Assembly (NCBI GenBank): GCA_965285935.1
Contig: OZ260662.1
Coordinates: forward strand, 88,970,001 to 89,034,000
DNA from: Ophelia neglecta
Lineage: Eukaryota
Length of the DNA: 64,000 bases
Reading direction: 5' to 3'
Numbering within the stretch: position 1 is the stretch's first letter; every line of letters begins with the position of its first letter. The translations under genes and the position numbers were made by a program. The notes below the pieces were generated by a model that searched no databases, was not told where the DNA came from, and saw only the letters and a list, made by a program, of their open reading frames with translations. This document shows, piece by piece, positions 3,421 to 38,161 of this stretch.

Positions 3421-6400
3421 TAACAAAATAGGTAAATTGATAGAATCCTATAGAAAGCCTTACATACGCTGTCATCCTTAGCAACCTGCTCCAGCACCCT
3501 CGATTCCTCTACCCGCCATGTCCACGGAGACAAAGCTACTCAACTAAATGATTAGTAACTGTTTTAAACCCCACCCCCAGGAGCCCGACAGACTCCCAGA
3601 CAAACTAAGTGTACTTGTGAAGTTTACCTCCGATGTCGCCAAGAATGTCTCATTGGCTGGACAGATAATATATCTTCTACTAGAGGTTCTCGTTGGAAGT
3701 TTTCTCCGCCTCTTAAAAGCTTATCAGTGTTGCAGTTGTCGTTCATACGATCACCAGGACTTCATAGCCTAGACGCTATAGGGTCGATGACCCGGGACCT
3801 AGCTTAGTTTTTGTGGCTGTGCCCGAATCCTGCTGAGTCCTACATATTTTGCATTAAGAAATTCATATTGCGTTTTGCCGTGACAGATTTGTCAATGGCA
3901 CTTTTTTGTTTTATTACACAGGGCTTTAAATTTGACGAACTAAAAGTAATGATGGTGCGCATTCAGCTTCACATGTCCTGCGACTGCCGGCTTTTGACAG
4001 ACGACATTATGGGCTCACGACTATCTGTACAAACATTTATAATTTCTTTGAATGGTGTAAAATTAGTGTACACTTTCCCTTCTCTAAGCTCAACCTGCCC
4101 GACACTATAATACTAGGTTATCACCCCAAACCCTGAGCCTTTCCCCCCACCTTTAATCAGTGGGTCGAGATCGTTGTAAGCAGAGTTTACTGTACACGAA
4201 TTGCGATGCTGAACGTCAGGATTTAACGACTGAAAAATAATGTGTAATCCATTGATTGTATCGACTAGGTAAAACATCACAGACACACAAAACAGGGGGA
4301 AAAACTCCTACCGTCGAGGGGTAGGCCCATGAGCCTTATAGCTATTCAAGAAATGGCCGTATTTCGAGACGACTAAAATCGGCTTTTAGAAATAATGATA
4401 GAGATAGATGCCTATAATTGCTAGAGCCAGCTTAACAGACATATTGAAACTCTAACACTGAGCTCCTTATTTGTTCATCATGTGACAATGGCATGAAGTG
4501 GACAATTTAATAAAGGCCTACATTTACTGATGTTTTAGCAAGTACTAGCTAGATCTTAGCAATGCCTATACGTACAACCTTATCATGGTTAAGATGTGTC
4601 TAGTTTATAATGGAGTTTTATGTGTTTTTTAATGTTTAAACAGCGCTTTCTCCGAGCTAATGTGTAAAAATCCTCAAAGATTTATTCGACGGAGGCTCAA
4701 TTTCCATCGGATAAACACTGTATCAACCTCTAATTGTCAGCGCTCTGCCAAACTGTCGCCGAGACAAATGGCCGCCCAATCGTCTTTCGCTTTATCAGAC
4801 CAACACCAGAGGGATCTGCCAGTGTGATTTATTCCCGGCATCCCGCGGGAAATAATGCGGATATAAAAGGATAAAAATATAATTTCCAGGCGATCCCAGA
4901 TAAACCTAGTTATTAAGTAACACACAGGCAAACTTTCAAAATTACATAAATAAATCCATAATAGACGGGGGCAGTGTGTTATGTGAAAGCACGGCTTCAA
5001 TCGCGACCTATCTCCGGCACAGTTGCCGATAACCAATGCCTGTACATAGACGTCAGATGTTGTCGATTTTACGACAACAATGCCGATAGGCCTATATAGT
5101 TATGAGGTCGTGTGCCTATACCAACAGGTTTTTGGTGGGTTTTACTCTGTGCAGTCTTTCCCGCAAAACCCAGATCTCGTATACATATGACTTTCACTGT
5201 CACTGCTCCAATATGTCACACACGGTCAGTCGCAGTGAGTTTTTTTTCCTTATAACTCACCCTCTTGCTGGAACCCATATTATTAACAACAGTCAACAAT
5301 GCGTTCAGTTATATTTGGAGCGTTTTTGGACTTTGTACGCTTCCAGTTATTTAAGGCTTATATACTTCTGCTGCTGACCTTTTTCACCGGATGCCAGGCA
5401 CGAAGGACGCTGGGATTGTTGACCTTGGTTTGCCAATATTGTAAACTTTGCCGTTGGTTACCTTGATCAGTGATTGTTTACACTACTAATCTGTCTGTGT
5501 GTGAAGCCAAAAACTGTCGTCGAACGACCTTGACAAGAAATTGAAGGTTATGGTGTTTTCTTGGAAGTTCGGTTTTTAAATCTGCCTGCTTCGCGAATAT
5601 TTTATGAGCTTTACATGCAGAAAGGTGGCAATGATCACTTCAGTCGCGGCCAGACATTTAATGGGCGCAATGGATAAGCCAAGCAAGTCGGTAGCCATAC
5701 ATTGATCAAGCTGTCTCCTGAATCTCAGTTTAAGCTAATGGCCAATGATGGAAAACGCCACCCTTTGCTGACAAAACTCGCAAAACGGCTCGGCTAAAAT
5801 TTACCGAAACGTCAAGCAATCAATTCGGGTTTGTCGGCACGCACAACAACAATTTAAATAATTTGATTGTTCTGCTTAGTTTACGAGAATAAGCAGCATT
5901 CCAGCTCGTTTGTCTATTCACTTGTGTAATTTTTGCCCAAAACCGTACTGCCTCTGTCAAGATCGCCAATAGGTCGAGGCTGCAAATTGCCCATCACTAT
6001 ATGGCTGCCGGCCTGTGGCTGGAGATGGGTCGCTTTATCATAATATACCTAATATTTGTGGCACCTCCTGACATGGAATATGTAAGGTGTCACGCTATAT
6101 ATGCAAAGGTCTGAAGAGTTTTTTAAGCGAAACATCAAACGACACTATTTCATAGTCTTGGATAAATAACGGGCAATCATTTTCAGTCAACGACAGTAAG
6201 CATAGAAGACTTCTTGAGATGGAAAGTGCCTGGCTTTTTTATCCTCTATATAGGTTTTGTCGGGTTGCTTTCCCATATAGTTATGTTTTTGGGTATGCCC
6301 TGGAACATATGTGTATCGATTCTCATAAAAACAAAACTTGGTTGGAACCAATAGAAAACTAAGGACACTACTTCATTGGAAGTTTTCATTCGTTCAAAAC

Positions 6401-23662: not shown

Positions 23663-25266
23663 TAATTTAAGTAATGCAGTCATCTTCACAAGATGGGAAC
23701 CATACAAGTTAATGTTTTTTCATTTATTTTCATTCCATTTTTCCTAAAACAAATTACGATCTGTATTTTAAACCAACAAAAAATGTAACAGGGCATTATA
23801 TTATGCAATTCTCATATTCTAATTTCCAGATGGAAATATGTTTTCAAATGGCATCTTAGACTTTTACTATTTTTGTCAAATAACGTGCTCACATCAGTTG
23901 CTCTTTTCTAAAAACCCTTATTGATAAATGATTTTAAAGTTTAATGTATATGTTTAGCGTCTATCCCAAAGGGCGTATTACTTATGGCATCTGATTCCCT
24001 TTAGACAGATATGTGATTTATAACTAAATGCAGCCGCTGTACCCATTTATCACAGAAAATAATATTGCTTTTAAAACATCACAATAGAAAAGATTTCGGC
24101 GCAGCAGTGTCTCATTTTCTACAAATGCTGAACTGATATCAAATAAGCCAGCCCATGTCTGGAACAATCCATTGCAGGTTCATTCGTTTTTTTACTCGCC
24201 AATTCCAAGCGTTATATCCAGGGCTGTACAACACACTTAATACATTGGGCTATTTTGGAGACCGGCTATCTTTGCTCAATCGAGCAGTTTCCATATTCAT
24301 CCTATCTTGTAAATGCTGCATTAGTTGGCAGGGAGAAAGGCCTTCATGTAAAGGTCAGAGAAGATGTCTTCTTCCATGGAAGTGGGATTAGTTTCGATAA
24401 ACCGCTGTGGCTCTAGGAGGTTGTCGCCGTGTTCTTCAATCAAAGAGGGGACAAGACAGCCATAAAAAGCTACAATAAAATTAAAATAGCTTCTGATAAC
24501 CTCAGTGCTCGCCTACTCTATAATTGATTTATTTGATTTAAATGTATTTGAGCACAGTATATTGAAGCATGGCAGAAGACAGTCCGAAGACGATAATTTG
24601 ATATGTAAGTATCCTTAAAGAAAAGGATGTTGCCAATGTTTCACTCTTCCCGCTGCATAGTAACGGTTATTTCGGCTATGTGGTCTAGTAAAGCTTTGGA
24701 GAGATTTTTACTCAATTTCTCATTTATGACCTTAGCCTTTACAAACACAATGGATAGCTTTTTATAGCATCAGGTGTTGTTGATGATTCACGAGGGACTG
24801 TGTGGGTCAAGCAGGCGACAAGGTCGCATCCAAGGTCAAAGTGTACGTTCGAGAGATGCTAATGAAATGTGAGGCACGTCGGGTAGATCAGCCTCGCCAG
24901 TCTGTTATTCGGCAGCTGGGCAGCCCGAGGGTGGTGCTGTTTGTGGTCTCCGCTTTCTCCCTGATACATCACCTGACGGAAACAAATCGGCGAAGATAGC
25001 AAGCACATCAAATATACATTGGAAGAACATCCGCCATAGCGCCATTGTTAGGCTTTACCACGTGATTGATGTGGAAAGGGCTGGCAATTTTGGGCAAACA
25101 AGCTTGTGACATTCAGGTTTTCTCTGACTGCTCGCCACAAAGTCTCTCTCTATTTATATCAAGCCTGTCATGGGTCAATGTATGGCTCTTGTTGCAATGC
25201 CACTAGCTACTAGTTTTGTCTGAATGTTCATTTTCCTCCTCACCATGTCTTCTTATTTCTTTGCAG

Positions 25267-26071
25267 GTAAAGGTTTATTTAAAAGAGCAATAATTCAGAG
25301 TGGGTCTGCTCTCAGTTCGTGGGCTGTGGCGAACGACCACTTAAAATATACTAGAGAACTGGCTGATCATGTCAACTGTTCGCAGTACTGGGGACAGAGC
25401 GCCCAACTTTTATATTGCTTCAAACAAAAACCATACGAGGAGTTAATTAATGTAGATATCAACCCGCCTAAATATTTCTCCGCCTTTGGGCCTGTGATAG
25501 ACAGACGGAGTGTTCTACCGACGGACGTACGAACTCTGATGGAACAGTCACAGTCCGTGTTTGGCGACACTAACGTACTACTTGGAATAATGAAAAACGA
25601 GGGATTCCTATACTTTAATCAACAAGAAATAACCGACGAGGGGGTGTCCGAGACTAAAATGCATAAAATGATACGGACATATGTGCGAAATCTGTATATG
25701 TATCACCGTCAGAAAATCTACGAGATTCTGCTGCATCACTATAGTGACTGGGAGCAGCCAAAAGACCCTGAAATAATCCGTGACAACCTGATGGAGCTTT
25801 TAGGGGATGGTCAGTTCATCGCGCCCATGATCGAGCTCACCCAGTTCCATGCTGAGTACGCCGCCGATACGTTCATGTATAGTTTTAGCTACCCGTCTCG
25901 GCTGGACACTTACCCGCGGTGGGCGGGGGGTGTGCACGGCGACGACATGACCTACGTGTTCGGCGCCCCGCTCACCGACGGCATCGACCCATTCACCTCT
26001 ACCTTCACCCGCTCGGAGAAGATGTTGACTGAGGCGGTGATGAGGTACTGGACAAACTTCATGAAAAGCGG
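25267..26071 (+). CDS. NLGN: Neuroligin large central exon
   Basis: ttgcAG| acceptor (possible alternative AG 6 nt downstream) and GG|GTGAGT donor; 805 nt, frame consistent with neighbours. Contains LFKRAIIQSGSALSSWA, AFGPVID, KNEG, HGDD.TYVFGAP and VMRYWTNFMKSG. Confidence 0.97.
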
Positions 26072-29000
26072 GTGAGTACGGTAACTGGTATAATATTACC
26101 AATCAACGTAAGCATAAAGACTATATTTTTAATCATTAATAATAGAATAAATCTATATAACGCTTGCTATCGAGTGAAACATAGCATATGGTCGGCATAT
26201 TGTGTCCAATTGCTATGACCCCTCGGCCTGTCAACCATAACAATTGAGTTGATAGACTGTCACTATAGTGTACTCTTCATACCGTTTACCTAACATGCTC
26301 GTTAGAAGGAAAAAGATAGGCTTCCTGGCCTTCGGTACTTGTACCTCTCACCTAACCATCCACCCCGTTCCTCCATCCTTCCTCCCTCGAGACCCTTTCC
26401 TGTTCCCTATCACGACCTCACACTATTTTGTTGTCTATTAAAGCATGTATAGCAATAGGGCTTTTTTAAAGTGAAACAATCATTGACTCTCATTGAGTCT
26501 CACAGAGTTTCAAACAATCGTACGAAACCCCCATGTAAAATTATTATAATGTGTATATAGTAGTATATGTTATTACCCTTGACACTATTTAGAAGGGTGA
26601 CGCTAGGAGCGCTTGGCATATTAGATAAGACCCCATCAATCTGTTTGGCCCGAGTGTATGGCTAAGATATAGGCCATTTAATACCCGGTTCAGTACATTA
26701 TTGGCCTGGTTCTTTATATTAATAATAAATGTGCCAAATATGTAGTTTCAGAGCCAAGAGTAATTCAATGACTTAAGGCAATTCATATTTTGATTTATAT
26801 TATTGGCAATGATTTGTAGTCTTTATGGGGTAGTGCGAAGAAACTAAACACAATGAATTGCTGAAACAAATATAGGTCACTCTTTATTGTTTAATTTACT
26901 ATAAGCTATGTGTTAGTATGTCTTCTTCGTTCAGTATGACCTGCTGATTTGCATGGGGGTATGTACTGATAAGTCAATTAAAGTTAGACGAATGCAATGT
27001 AGGCCTATATAATTTAGGTTCAGATACAAGTTTGTCCCGGAAAATGAATAACTTATATCATCGATAAGTGGTTTTCTGTAAGAATGCTTTTTGGGAACAC
27101 TCATAAAAGAGAAATGTAATGTTCTATGTTAGTCGAGTCATTTCTCTAATTTTTTTTTCATTTGTATGTTTAAAGTAGGACATCATTTAAATTATGCGAG
27201 TTTTTGTGGATATTTTGAATATATAAGTGAGACCATTTTAATAATTTCGTTTGTTACAGTTTGTTTCTTTTTTTTTATATATCAACAAATATTGATTGAT
27301 TTGTGAAATTAGGCACTACTCGGCATTAAGAGACCTTCAGAAAAGTCCCACAAATCCACTCTCCGACAAATGAATTATTCATTTTCTACGTTCGAAGCCT
27401 TAAAGCTCTTTTCGATATAGAAAACATGCGTTTTATCTTCTTAGTCTTAAAATAAGGAAAATGCGGATCGTTGTATTTTGAAGACGGTCCTTTCAATATA
27501 GGAAATATGACAAGTTCATACATTTCAAGCTGAGTTCAATTCAGTCAGAACATTTTGCTTTCAAATTAGTCAGGAGTGCACAGATGATATGTATTAAGTA
27601 TAATGTTTATAGCCGATTATTTTTTTCTACCTGGCTTATTTATCCCATATCCTCTGCCATATAGCCGAGGCTCCATATTCTCTTTTTTCCAAGTATTCTT
27701 GACTAATCTTGATCATCCCACGAGGGCAGATTCGTCACATCCTTCTATAAATACACATCAGTGAGTGTCGGTTTAACCTAAGCAGCTTGCAGCCAGGTAT
27801 TAACTGGCTAATATCTTCCCGTGTTGGTACACAATAGGTGCGCATTTCCTGTTAACGAAGTTTGTAAAAGCCTGCAGGATTAGCCGTATAAAGCCTATAT
27901 ACATTTCGCTTGAAAAAGCTTTCTTGTCGTCGATTTCATTCTCTGGTCGAACTACTTACCTATATACGTGGTAGGCAAGCTATAGAATATGTATGGCTAT
28001 AAATGAACAGAAAGAGGAAGTACTATAGTCCTTTCATGAAGACACCACTGTTCAGTGCCTCTTAATTATAAGTCTCATTTATTCATACCTTGTCTTGTGC
28101 AGAGGAAACATCTATTATGAAGGATATTACGGTCACATTCATAAGCTGAGATTTTGCCTAGAGTAGAAAGGCTGCAAAAGTAACCATTGTACGTAATGAT
28201 GACTATATAGGGTTAAATTATGCCGCCGATATTACTCAGAAATCAAACAAATATTAATATTTATAATTACAATTATATATTATCTCTAAGACATCGATGC
28301 AAAATGTTCGTGTGTGCCAAATCATTTAGTAAAGAGGTTGCCAATTGAAATTGGTCTGTTTCTTCTTGGGAACATGGTTTCCTGCAGTCCCATGACCGAT
28401 TAAGCGGGCAACTCTCCATATCGTGGTTTATTCACAATGCTTAAATCAATAATGGTCGGCCTGGGGAAGTACAGGCTATTGAATAATTCATTGGTAATCA
28501 AAGCTGCAAGCAAAGATGCCTGTTATGATCAGCTGAATATGAGTTGACATCCACTTAGCAAAGACCCGGAAATCACAAATGTTGCTGGTTACATTGTCTT
28601 TTTAACTAGCTCTGTTCTATAGCAGCCGCTACGGACATAAATATGGAATCGAGAGACTTGCCGAAAGGTTATTTCAAACGAAATCTTCTCTATAAGTTAT
28701 GTGTCAGTCCCTGTAGGGAGTGTACGTATGAAAGTTTAAAACAGATCCAACACTATCACAGCCTTTTTTAAATAAAAACAGGTGCTATCTTGACTAGAGT
28801 AGGCCTTATACAATTCTCAGCACAACTTACAAGTATACCGGTGCAGCAGACGACATGGTTGCCTTGGCAATCTGACGGGAAGTCAGAGGATTTTTGTCGT
28901 GGAAGTAATTGAATTATAGACAAGTGATAACCTCGCCGGGATGGGATGTCTCTAGGGGAGAGTGTATCGGTAGTAGTCTCAATTAGACTTGTATAGACGC

Positions 29001-29785
29001 TATCTACAAGCGACATGTCATTGTCGTGCTATCGGACCACGATTCCCTCGTATCAGGGGACTGAATAAACGTCTATTGCTCTGATAGTCGAGTGAAACAG
29101 GGGCGGTCCAGATCAATACATGTACACTGTAAACACAATTTAGTCAACTCAACTATTAAAAATAAAGACAATTATTATGAGTCAAGTCAACAAATATATT
29201 AATAGTTAGATGAACCATTCTATTTAGTTGAATTAACTATAGGTTTTCTAGTTAACCACATTTAAAACTAGTTGTGTCCACTTGAAAAACTGGACAGTTT
29301 GTTGAGTTGGAGTGACTATATAAAATAAAGACAATTATTATGAGTCCAGTCAACTGTATATTCCTCGGTTATCCCAACTAACTGGGCTTTATTAATACTG
29401 AAAGGAAGACAGCTAATCACAAATAAGCACAACAATGGCAAACACTTCAATTTTTTAATGTCAGAACGAACAATATAACACATAAACGGATCAAATCTCT
29501 CTTGGGTATAAGATCGCCAATGCTTAATAATATCAAAATCTATAACTTTCTTTGTTCTTACACAAACCACTTTTAACTTTTCATAGACTAACACGACATA
29601 GCTTCACAAATTATATAGAAAGGTTATGGGTAAACTACACAAGCAATCTAACATAAAACCGATGATTATTACTTCCTTAAATACCGATGATTATTACTTT
29701 TTTAAGCCTAATCAAATACTGCGTGACAAATTTATAGTATTTAAATTTCACAAATAAGCACAGCAATGGCAAACTGTTAATTTTT

Positions 29786-31021
29786 TTAATGAACAAGATA
29801 ACACATAACACACATGTCTAGCAGGTGCATCTGAATGAATTCCATGGTCCTCTTACAGTCCTTAGAATATTCTAGGTTGACTGCATAGTGGAGAGAGAAG
29901 AAATAAGCATTGGCATCATCTATAGCATCCACTTCATCTATGATAATTTCTTTCTCCGCCACGATCACAAACAATACCTCCCCAACCTGGGCAAGGTAAG
30001 CTCCATCCTGTACCATGATGGACTCCTCACTCCACTCTGTAATGGGACAATAGTGAGAGGCGGCTACTTTGTGCACTGCCACAGAGCTTGCAGGACAAGG
30101 TTGGTCCAGCCTGAAAAATTGACAAAATGATTAGTAACAAATAATTCAAATTACAAAATGAGCTTCATTCACAATTAGTAAACTTACATGTTGTTTGAGC
30201 GTTGAATTGAGGAGGATACCTAGTTACCCAACCATAAATAAAACTTTAGTGTATTAATATCTCTAGTACTGGGGCATAAAGTACCCGTTTAGCACATACA
30301 ATGATATTATGGGCAATATGGCCAAAATAATAGGCGCACTTTCAAAGAAAATCTCTTTGAAATTTCTTTTTTTTCTGGAGTCTCTTTGCCTGTGGAAGTG
30401 ACCCCCCCCCCCCCCCCCAACAACAAAAAATTCCCAGGGCTCAGCTCCAGATCTATGTGCAAATGTTAAAGGCTAGGCGCCCCTGAGCTGTTGAAAACTC
30501 AAAAAAAGTTCATTAAATTTATCTTGCGTGCTTATAAAACAGATTAACTGGAAGCACTTGCCTTCCCAGGGGCTCGATCTAGGTAACAGAAGGGTGGGGG
30601 CATTTTGACAGACATGTAATTTACAATTTATCCTTTAGGAGCACTGAAACTGAAAGTTATAGCTGATAGGCCTAGAGATTTCCAACTAAAACACCAAACA
30701 AATACAAGGAATTTTCGGAGCACACAATAAAATACCCGAGCCCTCTAAAGCTTAACAAGACCAGTCTACACAATTAAATGGTACCCCAGTCACACTGTCT
30801 TCAAGTGTGCCAGCACGCCCGCCCGGCGGCATGGCAGCTGAAGGCAGGGCATGACCATAGCCTGGGCCTAGCCTACATCGGAGCTCATCACGAAAATATG
30901 TCATATGCGATCACAAGAAGTTAATAAACAAAACTGAATAGTTACTTTAAACATAAACTTTGATTTGGGGGCACAAATGATGGAAATGTTCGGAGAAATT
31001 TGCTTCACTTACCTCCGCCAT
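29786..31021 (-). CDS. Putative 3-exon transposon-borne mini-gene (31021-31013, 30219-30188, 30110-29786), about 121 aa; C-terminus resembles animal EnSpm accessory / SAMD3-like proteins
   Basis: ATG GCG GAG|GTAAGT; ctAG|32-nt exon|GTAAGT; ttttcAG|exon 3. All junctions are in frame: MAE-VSSSIQRSNNM-LDQPCPASSVAVHK...VIVAEKEIIIDEVDAIDDANAYFFSLHYAVNLEYSKDCKRTMEFIQMHLL. The F.L.Y..NL.Y.K...T.EFIQ..L motif is recalled from SAMD3-like C-termini. Confidence 0.65.
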
Positions 31022-31040
31022 TTGCATTTGAAGCCGTTAC

Positions 31041-31070
31041 TGACGTCAGCTAAAGTCCCGGATGACGTCA
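31041..31070. promoter_or_regulatory. Tandem full CRE sites upstream of the transposon mini-gene
   Basis: TGACGTCA at 31041-31048 and 31063-31070, 22 bp apart, 20-50 bp upstream of a YY1-like AAATGGCGG start on the - strand. Confidence 0.6.
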
Positions 31071-32649
31071 GGTTCACTTGACTCATCTTGGATGGTTCAG
31101 TTAACTTGAATGGATGTTAGTTGAGTTGACATGGCGAAATTATCCACTTAACTTATTATCGGATAGTTGAGTTAACGTGAATGAAAAATTAGTTGAGTTG
31201 ACCTGTAATCATGCAGTTGAATCGCCAATTTTAGTTTTGCCAGTTAGCACAACTTAATAAAAGATAGTAAGGCTAACATTTGTGTTTACAGTGATATATA
31301 GATGTCATGTGATGTCGCGTTTATGTGTGGTGTTATAAGAGAACACGCCAGAAATTGTCCATTGCTAATAAGTACTTGCAATAACGTTCCATATGAAGGC
31401 AGCGTGACGGCTAAAAAAGTGTTTTCCTCTCATGGACAAACCGACTCACAATGGGTATTTCTTCCTCTTAAATCAAACGCAATTTAGATTACCCCATTAT
31501 GTTTTCATTGTACTGGAGGCAGAGTTTATCCCCATTGCAAAGTTCAGTTGTTTTAATCAGTATATATTCGCTCAGTATATGTGAGCAGGGTGTGTATTTA
31601 TCACTGAAATGTACTCTATTAGTGGTGGAATATGATATAAAACTAGAGATAGTCGGGTTTAGGGCTGTGGCCGTGTCGCCAGGGGCCCATTGCCATTCCA
31701 CTCGTCTCCTCGGTGTCAGAGGGCCGCGACTCACTCTCAATACATTCCGGTTATAGCCGAGATACCATCTAGTCGTCTACCATCTGACAGCCAGCCCAAT
31801 TCCGCAGTATTCAGCTTCATTTGGTGATGATTCTAGGTACAATTTTAATCAATTGAAGCACAGTAGAAGAGTAAAGCACTTTGAAGTGTTCCATTTTCAT
31901 TCAAAGGTCTAACTTGCTTATTTGCTTAAATGAAATTCACCCACCCTCATCCCCTCCCCCCCCCCCCCCCCCCGCTGCTTTTACGAACTCAAATAGGAAA
32001 TAAGCAGAGAGTGCAGGATCGGAAAGTTTAAGTTCCTATTTGTTCACAATGATTGCGTTTATGGTGTTCAATAAGAGAGCATGACTGCTGAAAGGAGAGG
32101 AAAATCGGGTCTTATTTCGATTCCTTAAGCCACGCATAACTTCGTCGTTTCAAGAATAAGATAGTAGGCGCAAAATGAAAGGAGCTTTCCTCTCTTTTTT
32201 ATAGCAGAATCCGTGGTCAATACATAACTGCTGTGAATGGCACTGCCTGAAATGGTAGGCTTTAATCTGTGTTCACTCTGTACTGTCTATCTGCAAAAGT
32301 TCCCTTGCATTGATGTAAATACACAGCCAATATCGTCATACTGCTGTGACGGATGTGTATATAAGGATGTAATAAGGTGACGGGAGTGCCCTCTTGGTGA
32401 GCTGAAGCCTCTTAATCCTAAGACTTGTGTTTGACGGTTCCTTGTCCAATGAGAGCATCGAACATCGAATCACATACAGGCCTTCAAATTTCATATATGA
32501 CAAATATTAAGAAAATGTTTGTTATGATTATTTTTTTTCTTAAGAAGCGGTATTTGATTTAATCTGATCATTGTGAGAAAAATGACAAACTTATTCTAAA
32601 AGACCCTTTTTTAAGCTGTTTAGCACGGCATTAAATCATTCATTTTTTA

Positions 32650-35108: not shown

Positions 35109-37247
35109 AACTGGGTACTGATACCTGAAATTCTCTATTTTATCTTTTACCTGGCCCAGTGTCCCGTCAGGAATTAGATAGAGCAATGGCTTGGTTGGCA
35201 CAATAGGCGAAAAGCGTCTGTCCTTAAAGTAACCGTGGACATCCTGAGGCGCCTAGCAACCATCGCAGACGACAACACGAACGCTGGAATCATAACTGGG
35301 TTCGGGGTTTTTGCCGTCGGAAAACTAGTGCATAATAGAATAACGGATGCTTATTTTTAACGAGCCGAAACTGTTTAATAGCACAGTAATAATCTGTTTA
35401 TTTCCAATGCTTACATAGACCATGAATATATCTCACAATACAATTTAGTATCGAAGCTTAAATATAGAGGCGGGCAGGTATTCTGGAACGCTCTGTGCAT
35501 AGAGTACCAGAAGTAACTATATACTGTTCATTGGTAAAAAGAAAATTATATATTTGATCGTCATATTAATACGTCCTTGTATAGAATTACTGTTTGTTTG
35601 TAATGTAAGATGAGCAAATGTGTGAAAACGTCAATATACACAGAAATATCCATTCTATCCCCTAAACCCAAGCATACACATTCAACCTTTTTAGCAATAT
35701 TAGACTGTGTCAAAAATGACAATAAGGACAATTTAGGTTTTCAGTAGCGTCCTTTAAAACATTGTTGATTTGCGGTAAATTGAACAAAAGGCAGTTCATT
35801 GTCAAAAGTTAAGTCCTTTTGTGCAGACTATAACTTGATCGTATATTAATTAATTATCCAAAATGACAATGCAAAATGAGCAGAGGACGTTAAAATTGTT
35901 CAGATGACCCATGCTTTTCACATATAACCTGCGTTGTCACAGCAATCTGTACTTATTTGTTCCTTTATTGGTGGCTCTCCGTTGGGGTGGTCTAACAGGC
36001 CCCGGTCCATTTCTGCCCCAACTTTCACCCTACAGTCTCGCGATGGCGGTTAAACCAAGCCTGCATGACGTTTTGAATGATTACGATTTACTTGGGCGGT
36101 TTCCCACTGTACTATAATTATTATTACAGCTAATTTGACTCTGCAATGCATCGCTCTTAGAACCAATGAACAACATGGCCCCCGTGAACCACATTAATAT
36201 CGCTTTACCTAAAAAGTATAACCTTGTTTACAAATAAATAAACGTGCAATAAGATTTGAACTTCCTTAAAACTTTGTCCACAGGGCGTACGTTGTACTAA
36301 GATAACTTGGTGGTTTTTTGTATCCTGATTATGACAAAGCTTACTAGTTTCAATCTGCAGGGCTCAGAACTCTAGGCCAGTGATTAACACACCAAGGTGC
36401 CTTCTGTTAAAATTAGACAGAAACTCAGTCATGCATTAACAAACGCCAAAAGTCTTGAAGTATAAACTCCGAATGTGGGTTTTATCGGAATATTGCTCAA
36501 CAGGGTTGGGAAGTTTACTGTTAGAAACTCTAAATCATATCTTTTACAAATTAACAGAGATGACGTAAAGCCCTTCCATCTAATCAATTATATATTTAAT
36601 ATAGGTAAATCGGAAAACATTTAACGAAACATTTACTGAAATCATTATAAATACAACTTTTTGGGTGGTCCCAAGATGCATTGATTTCAAAACTTGCTCA
36701 GCAGTGTTTTTTGCGTTGAACTGCTTCAAGTGAGTGATGATGCATGCTTTAGATGGCGGCAAGACGGGAAATTATTGTGAAGGCTTCTTTTACAATTATT
36801 GCACACTAATCTCACTAACTTTGATAAAAAATTATAATAAATTTAACGTTACCATTATGTACCTAAAGTTATTCTCATCAATTCATCTATAACAATTTGA
36901 TCCTTAGGATAATTAAAAGGAAAAACGTTCAATAATATGCCTTGGTTTTTGAACATGCCAAAATCTAAATTAAATGCTCAAATGGTAAATGCATGACAGG
37001 CTTTGATTTGAGACCACCTAGAAGATTGACCTAGATGGTGTCCTTTATAATGTGGTTTTAATGTCATTGGTTAACGCAAATCGTAACTTGGATGACGTCA
37101 CATGGTACACTGCCTGCCGCCATAGTATAGTTAGCCGTCTAGGTCCACCCTCTAGGTCCCTAATCCGAGTCTTACATGCATTCAGTACTATTTGTTTTTG
37201 ATTTTTATCGGGAGATGTTGGCCTTATCATGTTTTCGCCTGTTTCAG

Positions 37248-38161
37248 GTATGAGACCCATCATACGACACCATTACAGGGGAACCAAAATGGCTCTATGG
37301 CTGGATCTGATACCGAAACTACACAAATCGGACGACCTCTCGCCAAGATATCACCTTCTGGATAACTACGATAATAAAACTACATTCGAGGAGAAGGGGA
37401 CCAAACCTCTCAACTTGAAGGAGCTATTTCCCCACCCTCCAATCCCCCCGAATTCTCCACCCCCACGTTCAACTAGCCCCACTATACCCCCGAGCACCAC
37501 CGCTCTCCCCACTACCACAACGACATTACCTACTACCACCACCACCCGCAGACCCAACCCAAGTACCCACTGGCCCCATTCGCGGTCACGCCGCACCACA
37601 ACATTACCTGGCTGGCCTCCAAAAACTACTATCGGACCAACAGCCGCCGGTATGACCGCTAAAGACTCTACATTATCGCTCAGTGTTACTATAGCAGTAG
37701 GCTGCTCTTTATTGTTTCTCAACATTCTCATTTTCGCTGGCGTTTACTACCAAAAAGACCGAATGCGCATGGAGATGAAGATGCGCAAGCGTGAACTAGA
37801 GAAGGAACAACAGGAGGCGGCGCAGGGGGCGGATAGTGACCACCTGAAAAGTAGTACGGGTCCGGAGACGGACACCAACAGTTCCTCGATGGCCACACCG
37901 CCTATCCCACCCTCGATATCGCGGCACCAGATACAGCCGCAAATGACTACGCTACCGTACCCTAATAAGGGGCCGATACCCGTCATGCCTCCTCAGGCAC
38001 CCTACCATACCACCCCCTCGCGGCGTTCTCCCCGCCACCTTCGCCACATGGACCACCACACTCACGTGCTCGACCATGATGGCATGCTCAAACATTCTTC
38101 TTCCGCAGATTCCGGAACTGACGTCAATAATCACCATGGTAACCCATCGACAGTAGTATAG
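37248..38161 (+). CDS. NLGN: Neuroligin terminal coding exon: dimerisation helix, O-glycosylated stalk, TM helix, cytoplasmic tail, PDZ ligand
   Basis: tttcAG| acceptor. Encodes GMRPIIRHHYRGTKMALWLDLIPKLH, a P/T-rich stalk, LSVTIAVGCSLLFLNILIFAGVYYQKD (neuroligin TM signature) and ends HGNPSTVV* (class I PDZ motif T-x-V). Confidence 0.97.

What the first reader, a model, noticed from the sequence alone, without database searches (positions are those of the whole stretch)
29125..31293. CACTA-type element carrying an intact, spliceable antisense mini-gene nested in a neuroligin intron
Seen between perfect 14-bp CACTG TIRs with subterminal repeat arrays, on the - strand: a start exon ATGGCGGAG|GTAAGT, a 32-nt micro-exon with GTAAGT donor, and a 325-nt terminal exon. 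All join in frame to about 121 aa with no stops, and an AATAAA (29393-29388) lies just inside the left subterminal repeats. The ORF track shows only part of the last exon. Known (from recall): the C-terminal motif resembles the SAMD3-like accessory ORF of animal EnSpm elements. Inference: an internally deleted element with no transposase that still keeps a complete expression unit, possibly making a truncated accessory or repressor protein, or undergoing domestication.
Basis: partly seen in the sequence, partly recalled or inferred. Interest (0 to 1): 0.8.

Follow-up and report, generated by a model that had tools for sequence, protein, structure and literature searches.

The report
Deletion remnant of a two-gene CACTA-like transposon
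This is an ordinary cut-down copy of a CACTA-like jumping gene sitting in a neuroligin intron; its "mini-gene" is the leftover start of the transposase gene fused out of frame to the leftover end of the transposon's second gene.

Summary
It is a real mobile insertion. Contigs of two runs also carry the empty site, at about half depth, so the insertion is polymorphic and not fixed.

The "mini-gene" is a deletion scar, not an intact gene.
- The leader ATGGCGGAG|GTAAGT and the acceptor at 30110 are the normal 5' end of the transposase message. 30110-30032 encodes the transposase's first C2H2 finger, in frame with the leader.
- At about 30032|30031 this is fused, out of frame, to the last exon of the transposon's second gene, which is SAMD3-like.
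- The natural splice therefore gives 30 codons and a stop.

Longer relatives in this genome, and loci in a teleost and in one unidentified contig, carry transposase then SAMD3-like gene on one strand. The transposase is a distant relative of Transposase_21. Short relatives carry decayed mini-ORFs. No RNA run was on record.

The scan has noted a similar leader-exon CACTA derivative elsewhere in this genome (s1-748384).

Verdict: new member of a known kind, low interest.

The parts
29120..29124 (.). Left flank pentamer ATGTA, holding the target-site copy (TA or ATGTA)
   Evidence: The empty allele reads ...ATACATG|TATAGATG..., and the filled allele has 2174 extra nt, which is the 2169-nt element plus 5.
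29125..29138 (.). Left terminal inverted repeat CACTGTAAACACAA (the 3' end relative to the element's genes)
   Evidence: 14/14 complementary to 31280-31293; contigs break here.
29143..29354 (.). Left subterminal repeats: the 13-nt motif in inverted orientation and a 40-nt direct repeat
   Evidence: Homologous to the left ends of relatives L036, L037, L039, L044 and L042 at about 67-71% identity.
29388..29393 (-). AATAAA poly(A) signal; ATTAAA also at 29454-29459 and 29785-29790
   Evidence: read from the sequence. Use not tested.
29417..29485 (.). First copy of a roughly 70-90-nt segment repeated 331 nt away at 29748-29808. The second copy covers the ORF's last codons and its stop.
   Evidence: families D2 and D5 (89-90% identity).
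29786..30031 (-). Remnant of the last exon of the transposon's second gene (SAMD3-like). It has 81 codons plus the stop. About 73 codons (SEES...LLDM) are homologous; the last 8 codons and the stop are not the family's tail.
   Evidence: E 6e-10 to P0001 aa 448-498; at least 35 paralogous copies in the genome. DNA alignment to L042, L036, L047 and L017; differences to L042 by codon position are 22/8/43.
30032..30110 (-). Remnant of the start of the transposase coding exon (first C2H2 finger, CKLC...HYRVE), in frame with the leader ATG. The deletion junction lies at its 3' end, about 30032|30031.
   Evidence: BLASTP E 2e-6 to L039's transposase start at the same positions; hhalign 82.6%, E 1e-5 to transposase profile positions 8-30; tblastn E 3e-6 to P0131 aa 5-52; the acceptor and exon start align to L039.
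30111..31012 (-). Intron 1 of the element's transcription unit.
   Evidence: Only the last 40 nt or so before the acceptor align to L039, and the micro-exon region does not. No match to any fetched locus.
31013..31021 (-). Coding end of the leader exon, ATGGCGGAG, followed by the gtaagt donor. It holds the start codon of the transposase message. The transcription start is unknown.
   Evidence: the block AAATGGCNNNG|GTAAG is conserved at 15 loci in about 6 subfamilies; in L039 it is in frame with the transposase N-terminus.
31041..31070 (-). Promoter-like block with two TGACGTCA (CRE) palindromes, at 31041-31048 and 31063-31070
   Evidence: 'ACGTCATCCGG' is conserved upstream of the leader in relatives. 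Function is inferred.
31072..31205 (.). Right subterminal repeats (three copies of the 13-nt motif and one inverted 15-mer)
31280..31293 (.). Right terminal inverted repeat TTGTGTTTACAGTG
31294..31298 (.). Right flank pentamer ATATA

Best explanation
The stretch 29125-31293 is a non-autonomous, internally deleted copy of a two-gene CMC (CACTA/EnSpm-like) DNA transposon. It sits antisense in a neuroligin intron and is still polymorphic (filled and empty alleles) in the sequenced sample.

The parent type has this layout:
- a promoter-like block with CRE sites next to one set of subterminal repeats;
- a short leader exon ending ATGGCNNNG|GTAAG;
- a transposase of about 880 aa with N-terminal C2H2 fingers, whose start codon lies in the leader;
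- a PHD/RING-like segment plus a SAMD3-like second gene;
- that second gene's last exon lying next to the other subterminal repeats.

One deletion removed everything from about codon 30 of the transposase to about nucleotide 10 of the second gene's last exon. It joined the two out of frame at about 30032|30031.

What is left is a promoter, the leader, intron 1 with its acceptor, a chimeric last exon and poly(A) signals. It looks like a mini-gene only because a deletion derivative must keep both ends to stay mobile. If it is transcribed, the inherited splice (31013^30110) gives a 30-aa peptide ending at TGA 30029-30027, not a SAMD3-like protein.

The element can move only if a related transposase recognises its ends in trans.

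Shown: the ends, the empty allele, the homologies, the junction and the gene order in relatives. Inferred: promoter activity, splicing, and mobilisation in trans.
For: - Mobile insertion: perfect inverted ends, end-restricted 13-mers, and an empty-site joint at half depth in two runs.
- Family: relatives L036, L037, L039 and L044 share the same layout. Three of them have 2-bp target duplications (TA, CA, TA) and the four are 95-98% identical to each other.
- Leader and promoter block conserved at 15 loci.
- Long relative on C1: leader at 17626228-17626286, transposase at 17627177-17629672 (profile E 2.8e-251), PHD-like and SAMD3-like exons, and the last exon at 17632629-17632868.
- The same gene order is seen at C3:2.02-2.035 Mb and at three further loci, judged from coordinates. 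It is also seen in Astyanax mexicanus (L065) and in a Logan contig (L064).
- Transposase family against this genome's Transposase_21 ORFs: hhalign 95.7%, E 9.4e-9 over 414 columns. One member has a sub-threshold DUF4218 match.
- Chimeric exon and junction.
- L039 is an independent deletion derivative that keeps the transposase start but lacks the last exon.
- Animal CACTA elements with 2-bp duplications and one alternatively spliced transcription unit are described in PMC1636069.
Against: - No other copy of this exact subfamily, and no autonomous partner with the same ends, was found in the assembly.
- The flanks do not show the clean 2-bp duplication seen in relatives. The filled allele has 5 extra nt (ATGTA|...|ATATA).
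- The link to Transposase_21 rests on profile comparison only; Pfam itself gives no hit for the transposase pieces.
- No RNA data exist to show which splice is used.
- The last-exon remnant is still open over 81 codons, which a very old dead copy would not be expected to keep.
Confidence: 0.85

Rival explanations
1. The element expresses a three-exon, 121-aa protein (leader, 32-nt micro-exon, 325-nt exon) that carries the C-terminal domain of the accessory protein and acts as a truncated regulator or repressor of the transposon family.
For: The three segments join in frame with consensus splice signals. The 30187 donor is the only GTRAGT inside the intron and falls in the needed phase. The homologous 73-codon block is still open and differs from L042 mostly at third codon positions.
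Against: - The micro-exon and its flanks are not conserved in the relative's intron or in any fetched locus.
- Its acceptor has a purine-rich tract.
- 29 AG..GT segments in the intron would give the same phase without a stop, so one fitting candidate is not surprising.
- One run carries a C>T change at donor position +5, at 30183.
- 25 of the 121 residues are out-of-frame zinc-finger DNA, and the conserved tail is missing.
- Related short elements carry truncated or frameshifted mini-ORFs.
- The third-position bias reflects divergence between autonomous lineages, not this copy.
Confidence: 0.05
2. Gene capture. A CACTA-type element picked up a fragment of a host SAMD3-like gene, as Pack-type elements do.
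For: The SAMD3-like family is annotated as ordinary genes in teleosts.
Against: The SAMD3-like gene lies directly downstream of the transposase on the same strand at five loci of this genome and in two other organisms. In L042 its last exon is followed by a terminus homologous to the window's left end. The fragment is therefore native to the transposon.
Confidence: 0.03
3. A domesticated or exapted unit serving the host, for example an antisense promoter or regulator of the neuroligin gene.
For: It lies antisense in a neuroligin intron and has CRE sites.
Against: The insertion is polymorphic, with an empty allele at about equal depth in the same sample. There is no evidence of conservation or expression.
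Confidence: 0.02
4. A Transib-type element, suggested by a CAC-start heptamer and five extra flanking nucleotides.
For: The filled allele is 2169+5 nt longer than the empty one, and the flanking pentamers match at 4 of 5 positions.
Against: Relatives with homologous ends have 2-bp duplications. The family's transposase aligns to Transposase_21-type ORFs, not to a RAG1-like core. A TA duplication plus a 3-nt difference in a TA-rich flank explains the same data.
Confidence: 0.02

Closest known systems
dSpm / I elements: internally deleted derivatives of maize En/Spm (CACTA)
   Same: CACT-type inverted ends and subterminal repeat motifs. The promoter and first exon sit at one end and the 3' exon at the other. 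An internal deletion removes the coding middle but keeps both ends, so a truncated transcription unit remains. Movement depends on proteins supplied in trans. (Established knowledge; background in PMC1636069.)
   Different: This is an animal element. Relatives show 2-bp rather than 3-bp duplications. The second protein is SAMD3-like and unrelated to TnpA. No expression or suppressor effect has been shown.
Animal CACTA/TRC elements such as SmTRC1 of Schistosoma mansoni (PMC1636069)
   Same: They are metazoan, have short inverted ends and 2-bp target duplications, and have one transcription unit that is alternatively spliced into a transposase message and a shorter message without the transposase domain.
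   Different: The transposase here is only a distant relative of Transposase_21 (profile level), and Pfam does not hit it. The accessory gene belongs to a large conserved family, whereas the SmTRC accessory proteins had no detectable relatives.
Teleost 'sterile alpha motif domain-containing protein 3(-like)' / 'PB1 domain-containing' proteins (P0001 family)
   Same: Window residues 49-99 of the last-exon frame align to P0001 aa 448-498 at 39% identity, E 6e-10. Full-length relatives in this genome align over aa 6-328.
   Different: Only about 73 of about 516 residues are present. The N-terminal PB1-like part, the middle part and the last 18 residues or so are absent.

Membership tests
CMC (CACTA/EnSpm-Mirage-Chapaev) DNA transposons | Terminal inverted repeats starting CACT(A/G) | tested here: met
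   CACTGTAAACACAA, 14/14 complementary. Relatives have CACTGTAAAAAA.
CMC (CACTA/EnSpm-Mirage-Chapaev) DNA transposons | Short target-site duplication: 2-4 bp in the superfamily (from recall); 2 bp in animal CACTA elements according to PMC1636069 | tested here: inconclusive
   Relatives L036, L039 and L044 show TA, CA and TA. In the window the filled allele exceeds the empty one by the element plus 5 nt, with flanks ATGTA/ATATA. This is either TA plus 3 extra nt or a 5-bp duplication with one change.
CMC (CACTA/EnSpm-Mirage-Chapaev) DNA transposons | Arrays of subterminal repeat motifs in both ends | tested here: met
   Six copies of the 13-mer, all in the two ends; none of 100 shuffles reaches 6.
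CMC (CACTA/EnSpm-Mirage-Chapaev) DNA transposons | Family encodes a DDE transposase of the Transposase_21 type | tested here: met
   The window's element has none apart from a 27-codon remnant. Long relatives encode one. Profile A2 against Transposase_21-bearing ORFs A3 gives hhalign 95.7%, E 9.4e-9 over 414 columns. There is no direct Pfam hit, and DUF4218 is sub-threshold in P0135.
CMC (CACTA/EnSpm-Mirage-Chapaev) DNA transposons | A single transcription unit with a shared leader exon, alternatively spliced | not testable with these tools
   The leader is in frame with the transposase start in L039 and in the window. No RNA run was on record.
SAMD3-like / P0001 family (second gene of these transposons) | C-terminal block ...G(L/M)(H/A)Y.(L/V)NL.Y...K.T..F(I/V)Q..(L/M)L(D/E)(L/I/M) | tested here: met
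   BLASTP E 6e-10; at least 35 paralogous copies.
SAMD3-like / P0001 family (second gene of these transposons) | Full architecture: N-terminal PB1-like part, middle part with the RWPxLF motif, and a C-terminal tail | tested here: not met
   tblastn of P0001 and of the L042 and L049 exons against the element finds only the C-terminal block. The tail is not in frame.

The most novel reading that the evidence does not exclude
The element is transcribed from its own CRE-bearing promoter. Through inclusion of the 32-nt exon, or through re-initiation, it makes a small protein carrying only the C-terminal block of the SAMD3-like accessory protein. That protein interferes with the full-length accessory protein of autonomous relatives, acting as a deletion-derived repressor like the KP protein of P elements, and its gene segregates in the population.
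Probability: 0.04. Interest if true: 0.55.

Novelty: new member of a known kind. Interest (0 to 1): 0.25.

Why it matters
For this locus it matters little. It is a standard non-autonomous transposon copy, and the apparent gene is a by-product of where the deletion fell.

Three points give it modest value:
- The empty allele shows that this family has moved recently in this species, or that the insertion is still segregating, inside a neuroligin gene.
- The junction gives a clean example of how leader-exon transposons produce gene-like remnants that annotation pipelines, and readers, can mistake for orphan genes.
- The comparison shows that the large 'SAMD3-like' protein family of teleosts is, in at least some loci, the second gene of a CACTG-ended two-gene transposon that also occurs in this distant animal. 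That bears on how those genes should be annotated.

Tried and rejected
- Word search with the last-exon peptide found no candidate, and Pfam gave no family.
- The protein atlas returned only unnamed eukaryotic clusters.
- The PDB searched by sequence gave nothing significant.
- A DNA search of the genome with the whole element found only four matches, at about 68% identity to the left end. A 29-nt end pattern with up to 3 mismatches found the window alone, so there are no close copies for a within-subfamily ORF or dN/dS test.
- dN/dS against L042: dS is saturated. Only the codon-position pattern 22/8/43 is usable, and it speaks about the autonomous ancestors.
- Direct BLAST of this genome's Transposase_21 ORFs against L042, L043 and L049 found nothing. 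The relation appears only at profile level.
- My first idea was that cag|30036 is the conserved acceptor of the last exon (alignment A1). I dropped it after one search showed that 'TCCCATTACAG' is transposase coding sequence (S-H-Y-R). A direct leader-to-30034 splice (85 aa, in frame) would need a GAG acceptor inside that coding remnant and has no support.
- An RNA test was impossible: no RNA run was on record, and the three runs laid are contigs of one sample.
- Rfam gave no match. The bacterial promoter and terminator scan does not apply.
- The joined 121-aa peptide was not sent to any search.
Full report
**1. What is in the sequence.**

The window is G000:C2:88970001-89034000 of a 762-Mb animal assembly.

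- Positions 29125-29138 and 31280-31293 form a perfect 14-bp inverted pair, CACTGTAAACACAA.
- Both ends carry a 13-nt motif, TAGTTGAGTTGAC. With up to two mismatches it occurs six times in the 64-kb window, always inside 29143-29237 or 31118-31202. No shuffle of 100 reaches six.
They are ATGGCGGAG|gtaagt (31021-31013), a 32-nt piece (30219-30188) and cag|G (30110) down to TAA (29788-29786).
- AATAAA lies at 29393-29388, and there are two ATTAAA signals as well.
- Two TGACGTCA palindromes lie just upstream of the ATG, at 31041 and 31063.
- The host gene is a neuroligin on the + strand. A carboxylesterase-fold exon lies at 25224-26075 (E 1.7e-52). A last exon from about 37230 has the typical transmembrane segment and a TVV end. 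The element is therefore intronic and antisense.

**2. It is a real and still polymorphic insertion.**

No RNA run was on record. The three runs that hold the stretch are contigs of one sample.

Laid on 28200-32200, runs X1 and X2 each contain a contig that joins 29122 to 31297, skipping 2174 nt. Other contigs break exactly at 29124 and 31297. Depth is about 27 in the flanks, 13-20 inside, and 14-15 for the empty form. This is the pattern of a heterozygous insertion.

The filled allele exceeds the empty one by the 2169-nt element plus 5 nt. The flanks read ATGTA|element|ATATA and the empty site reads ...ATACATGTATAGATG... . Two readings fit: a 5-bp duplication with one change, or a TA duplication plus three extra nucleotides in a TA-rich flank. 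Relatives favour 2 bp (see section 3). I leave this open.

**3. Relatives.**

The element has no close copy, but it has a related family at about 68% identity.

- L036, L037, L039 and L044 are 1.5-2.5 kb long and 95-98% identical to each other. Their ends are CACTGTAAAAAA, and three of them have matched 2-bp flanks (TA, CA, TA).
- They share the window's layout: left end, last exon, leader block, right end.
- The leader block is conserved. 'ACGTCATCCGG', a spacer, then AAATGGCNNNG|GTAAG occurs at 15 loci that fall into about six subfamilies.

**4. The parent type is a two-gene transposon.**

The last-exon peptide has at least 35 paralogous copies in the genome. One of them (L042) lies next to a left end homologous to the window's and downstream of a 348-aa exon.

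A word search with that exon found P0001 (516 aa). Close relatives of P0001 are teleost proteins that sources name 'sterile alpha motif domain-containing protein 3(-like)' or 'PB1 domain-containing'. The window's peptide aligns directly to P0001 aa 448-498 (39% identity, E 6e-10).

Upstream of the SAMD3-like gene, on the same strand, lie ORFs with the marks of a DDE transposase: C2H2 fingers and the motifs ...DDFE.CNPL......ADNLGAH..., CRFC and HDLLEGV.

- A full scan of 1.84 billion representatives with one piece found 5869 related clusters. Full-length members are about 880-900 aa.
- A profile of 25 of them (A2) aligns to this genome's Transposase_21-bearing ORFs (A3) over 414 columns, with probability 95.7% and E 9.4e-9. 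One member has a sub-threshold DUF4218 match. Pfam itself does not cover the family.
- Searching the genome with A2 gives the best match at C1:17627177-17629672 (E 2.8e-251). This lies exactly between a leader block at C1:17626228-17626286 and the PHD-like and SAMD3-like exons at C1:17630114 onward, with the last exon at 17632629-17632868.
- The same order is seen at C3:2.024-2.035 Mb, where the copy is decayed and carries other insertions. From coordinates it is also seen at C7:96.96 Mb, C7:34.80 Mb and C3:1.93 Mb.
- The order holds in other animals. In Astyanax mexicanus (L065) and in a Logan contig (L064), the 878-885-aa transposase is followed on the same strand by a gene that matches P0001 (E 9e-55 and 4e-27). 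In L065 a candidate pair of CACTG ends with TA|TA flanks encloses both genes. That evidence is weak, at 12 of 14 matches.

**5. Anatomy of the 'mini-gene'.**

The acceptor at 30111/30110 and the sequence after it align to L039, a family member that kept the start of the transposase exon (alignment A5). In L039 the leader ATGGCGGAG runs in frame into ...WSCKFC...LLSHYRLAHF...SLPCLYPNC..., which matches transposase N-termini (E 5.5e-14 to P0131).

In the window the same frame reads MAE|AGPTLSCKLCGSAQSSRLSLLSHYRVE. This matches three references:
- L039 at the same positions (BLASTP E 2e-6);
- profile A2 positions 8-30 (hhalign 82.6%, E 1e-5);
- P0131 aa 5-52 (tblastn E 3e-6).

After ...CATTACAGAGTGG (to 30032) the sequence switches to AGTGAGGAGTCC..., which aligns to ACTGAAGAATCA... 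of the SAMD3-like last exon in L042. That is nine nucleotides into the exon.

So one deletion fused transposase codon ~30 to the start of the second gene's last exon, with a frame shift. The inherited splice, leader to 30110, gives 30 codons and stops at TGA 30029-30027.

The first 25 residues of its peptide are finger-coding DNA read in another frame that happens to be open.

The 32-nt micro-exon is what shifts the frame back.
- It is the only candidate with a GTRAGT donor, but 29 AG..GT segments in the intron would give the same phase without a stop.
- Its acceptor tract is purine-rich.
- The region has no counterpart in L039's intron or in any fetched locus.
- One run carries a change at donor position +5.

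The ORF also ends early. L042 and L017 continue for about 18 conserved residues that align to P0001's tail. The window stops after eight unrelated residues, inside a segment that is duplicated 331 nt away.

**6. No sign of selection on such mini-ORFs.**

In the L036 family a direct leader-to-last-exon join would be in frame. The ORF is nonetheless truncated in L036 and L037, frameshifted in L044 and absent from L039. Other subfamilies carry stops and frameshifts.

The window's homologous block differs from L042 at 22/8/43 first/second/third codon positions, with saturated dS. This reflects constraint in autonomous ancestors and a fairly young deletion, not a function of this copy.

**7. Verdict.**

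This is a non-autonomous deletion derivative of a two-gene CMC transposon. It is analogous to dSpm elements of maize and consistent with what is described for animal CACTA elements: 2-bp duplications and one alternatively spliced unit (PMC1636069).

The reading as an intact or domesticating gene is not supported.

The joined three-exon peptide was not searched. The scan holds unchecked notes of a complete two-gene EnSpm/CACTA element and of another transposase-less CACTA derivative with a leader exon elsewhere in this genome.

Noticed in passing
G000:C1:17626228-17632868 (L049, L017); L065:5967-14210; L064: The teleost 'SAMD3(-like)' / 'PB1 domain-containing' protein family (P0001) is the second gene of a two-gene CACTG-ended transposon. 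It lies downstream of a C2H2-finger DDE transposase of about 880 aa, in this genome, in Astyanax mexicanus and in one unidentified contig. No paper linking SAMD3 to transposons was found in the library searched.
   Followed up: partly
G000:C2:62517251-62519686: A transposase of the same family with an 812-aa open frame and no stop inside the match. It is a candidate active copy. Its ends and neighbours were not read.
   Followed up: no
window 30032-30805: In run X3 the contigs over the element's intron differ from the reference: 10 letters and an 11-nt gap in 359 nt, and 12 letters in 234 nt. X3 shows no empty-site joint, although it is listed as the same sample as X1 and X2. This may be a second filled haplotype or a different library type.
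   Followed up: no
window 25224-26075 and 37230-38161: Neuroligin exons on the + strand. The last exon encodes a Ser/Thr/Pro-rich stalk, a transmembrane segment and a C-terminal TVV.
   Followed up: partly
L042:2060-2290 and 3607-3852; L043:5781-6025: Copies of a MITE-like repeat of about 245 bp (90-93% identical), with 29-31-nt inverted arms, inserted in and around the decayed autonomous element.
   Followed up: no
alignment A4, profile positions 176-212: The middle part of the SAMD3-like family (...GWKNSLKFKMGNYR...) gives weak, non-significant matches to forkhead (FOXO) DNA-binding domains (E 0.4-1). This is a hint that the accessory protein's DNA-binding part lies there, in a region absent from the window's remnant.
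   Followed up: no
L042:5238-5597 (-); L049:1073-1411 (+): A PHD/RING-like cysteine-rich ORF sits between the transposase and the SAMD3-like exon in both long relatives. Pfam matches are sub-threshold only (zf-RING_5 at E 3e-4).
   Followed up: no
window 30401-30418 and 31940-31975: Homopolymer C/G tracts attract hundreds-fold depth and spurious joints between each other in the laid contigs. These are not biological junctions.
   Followed up: no
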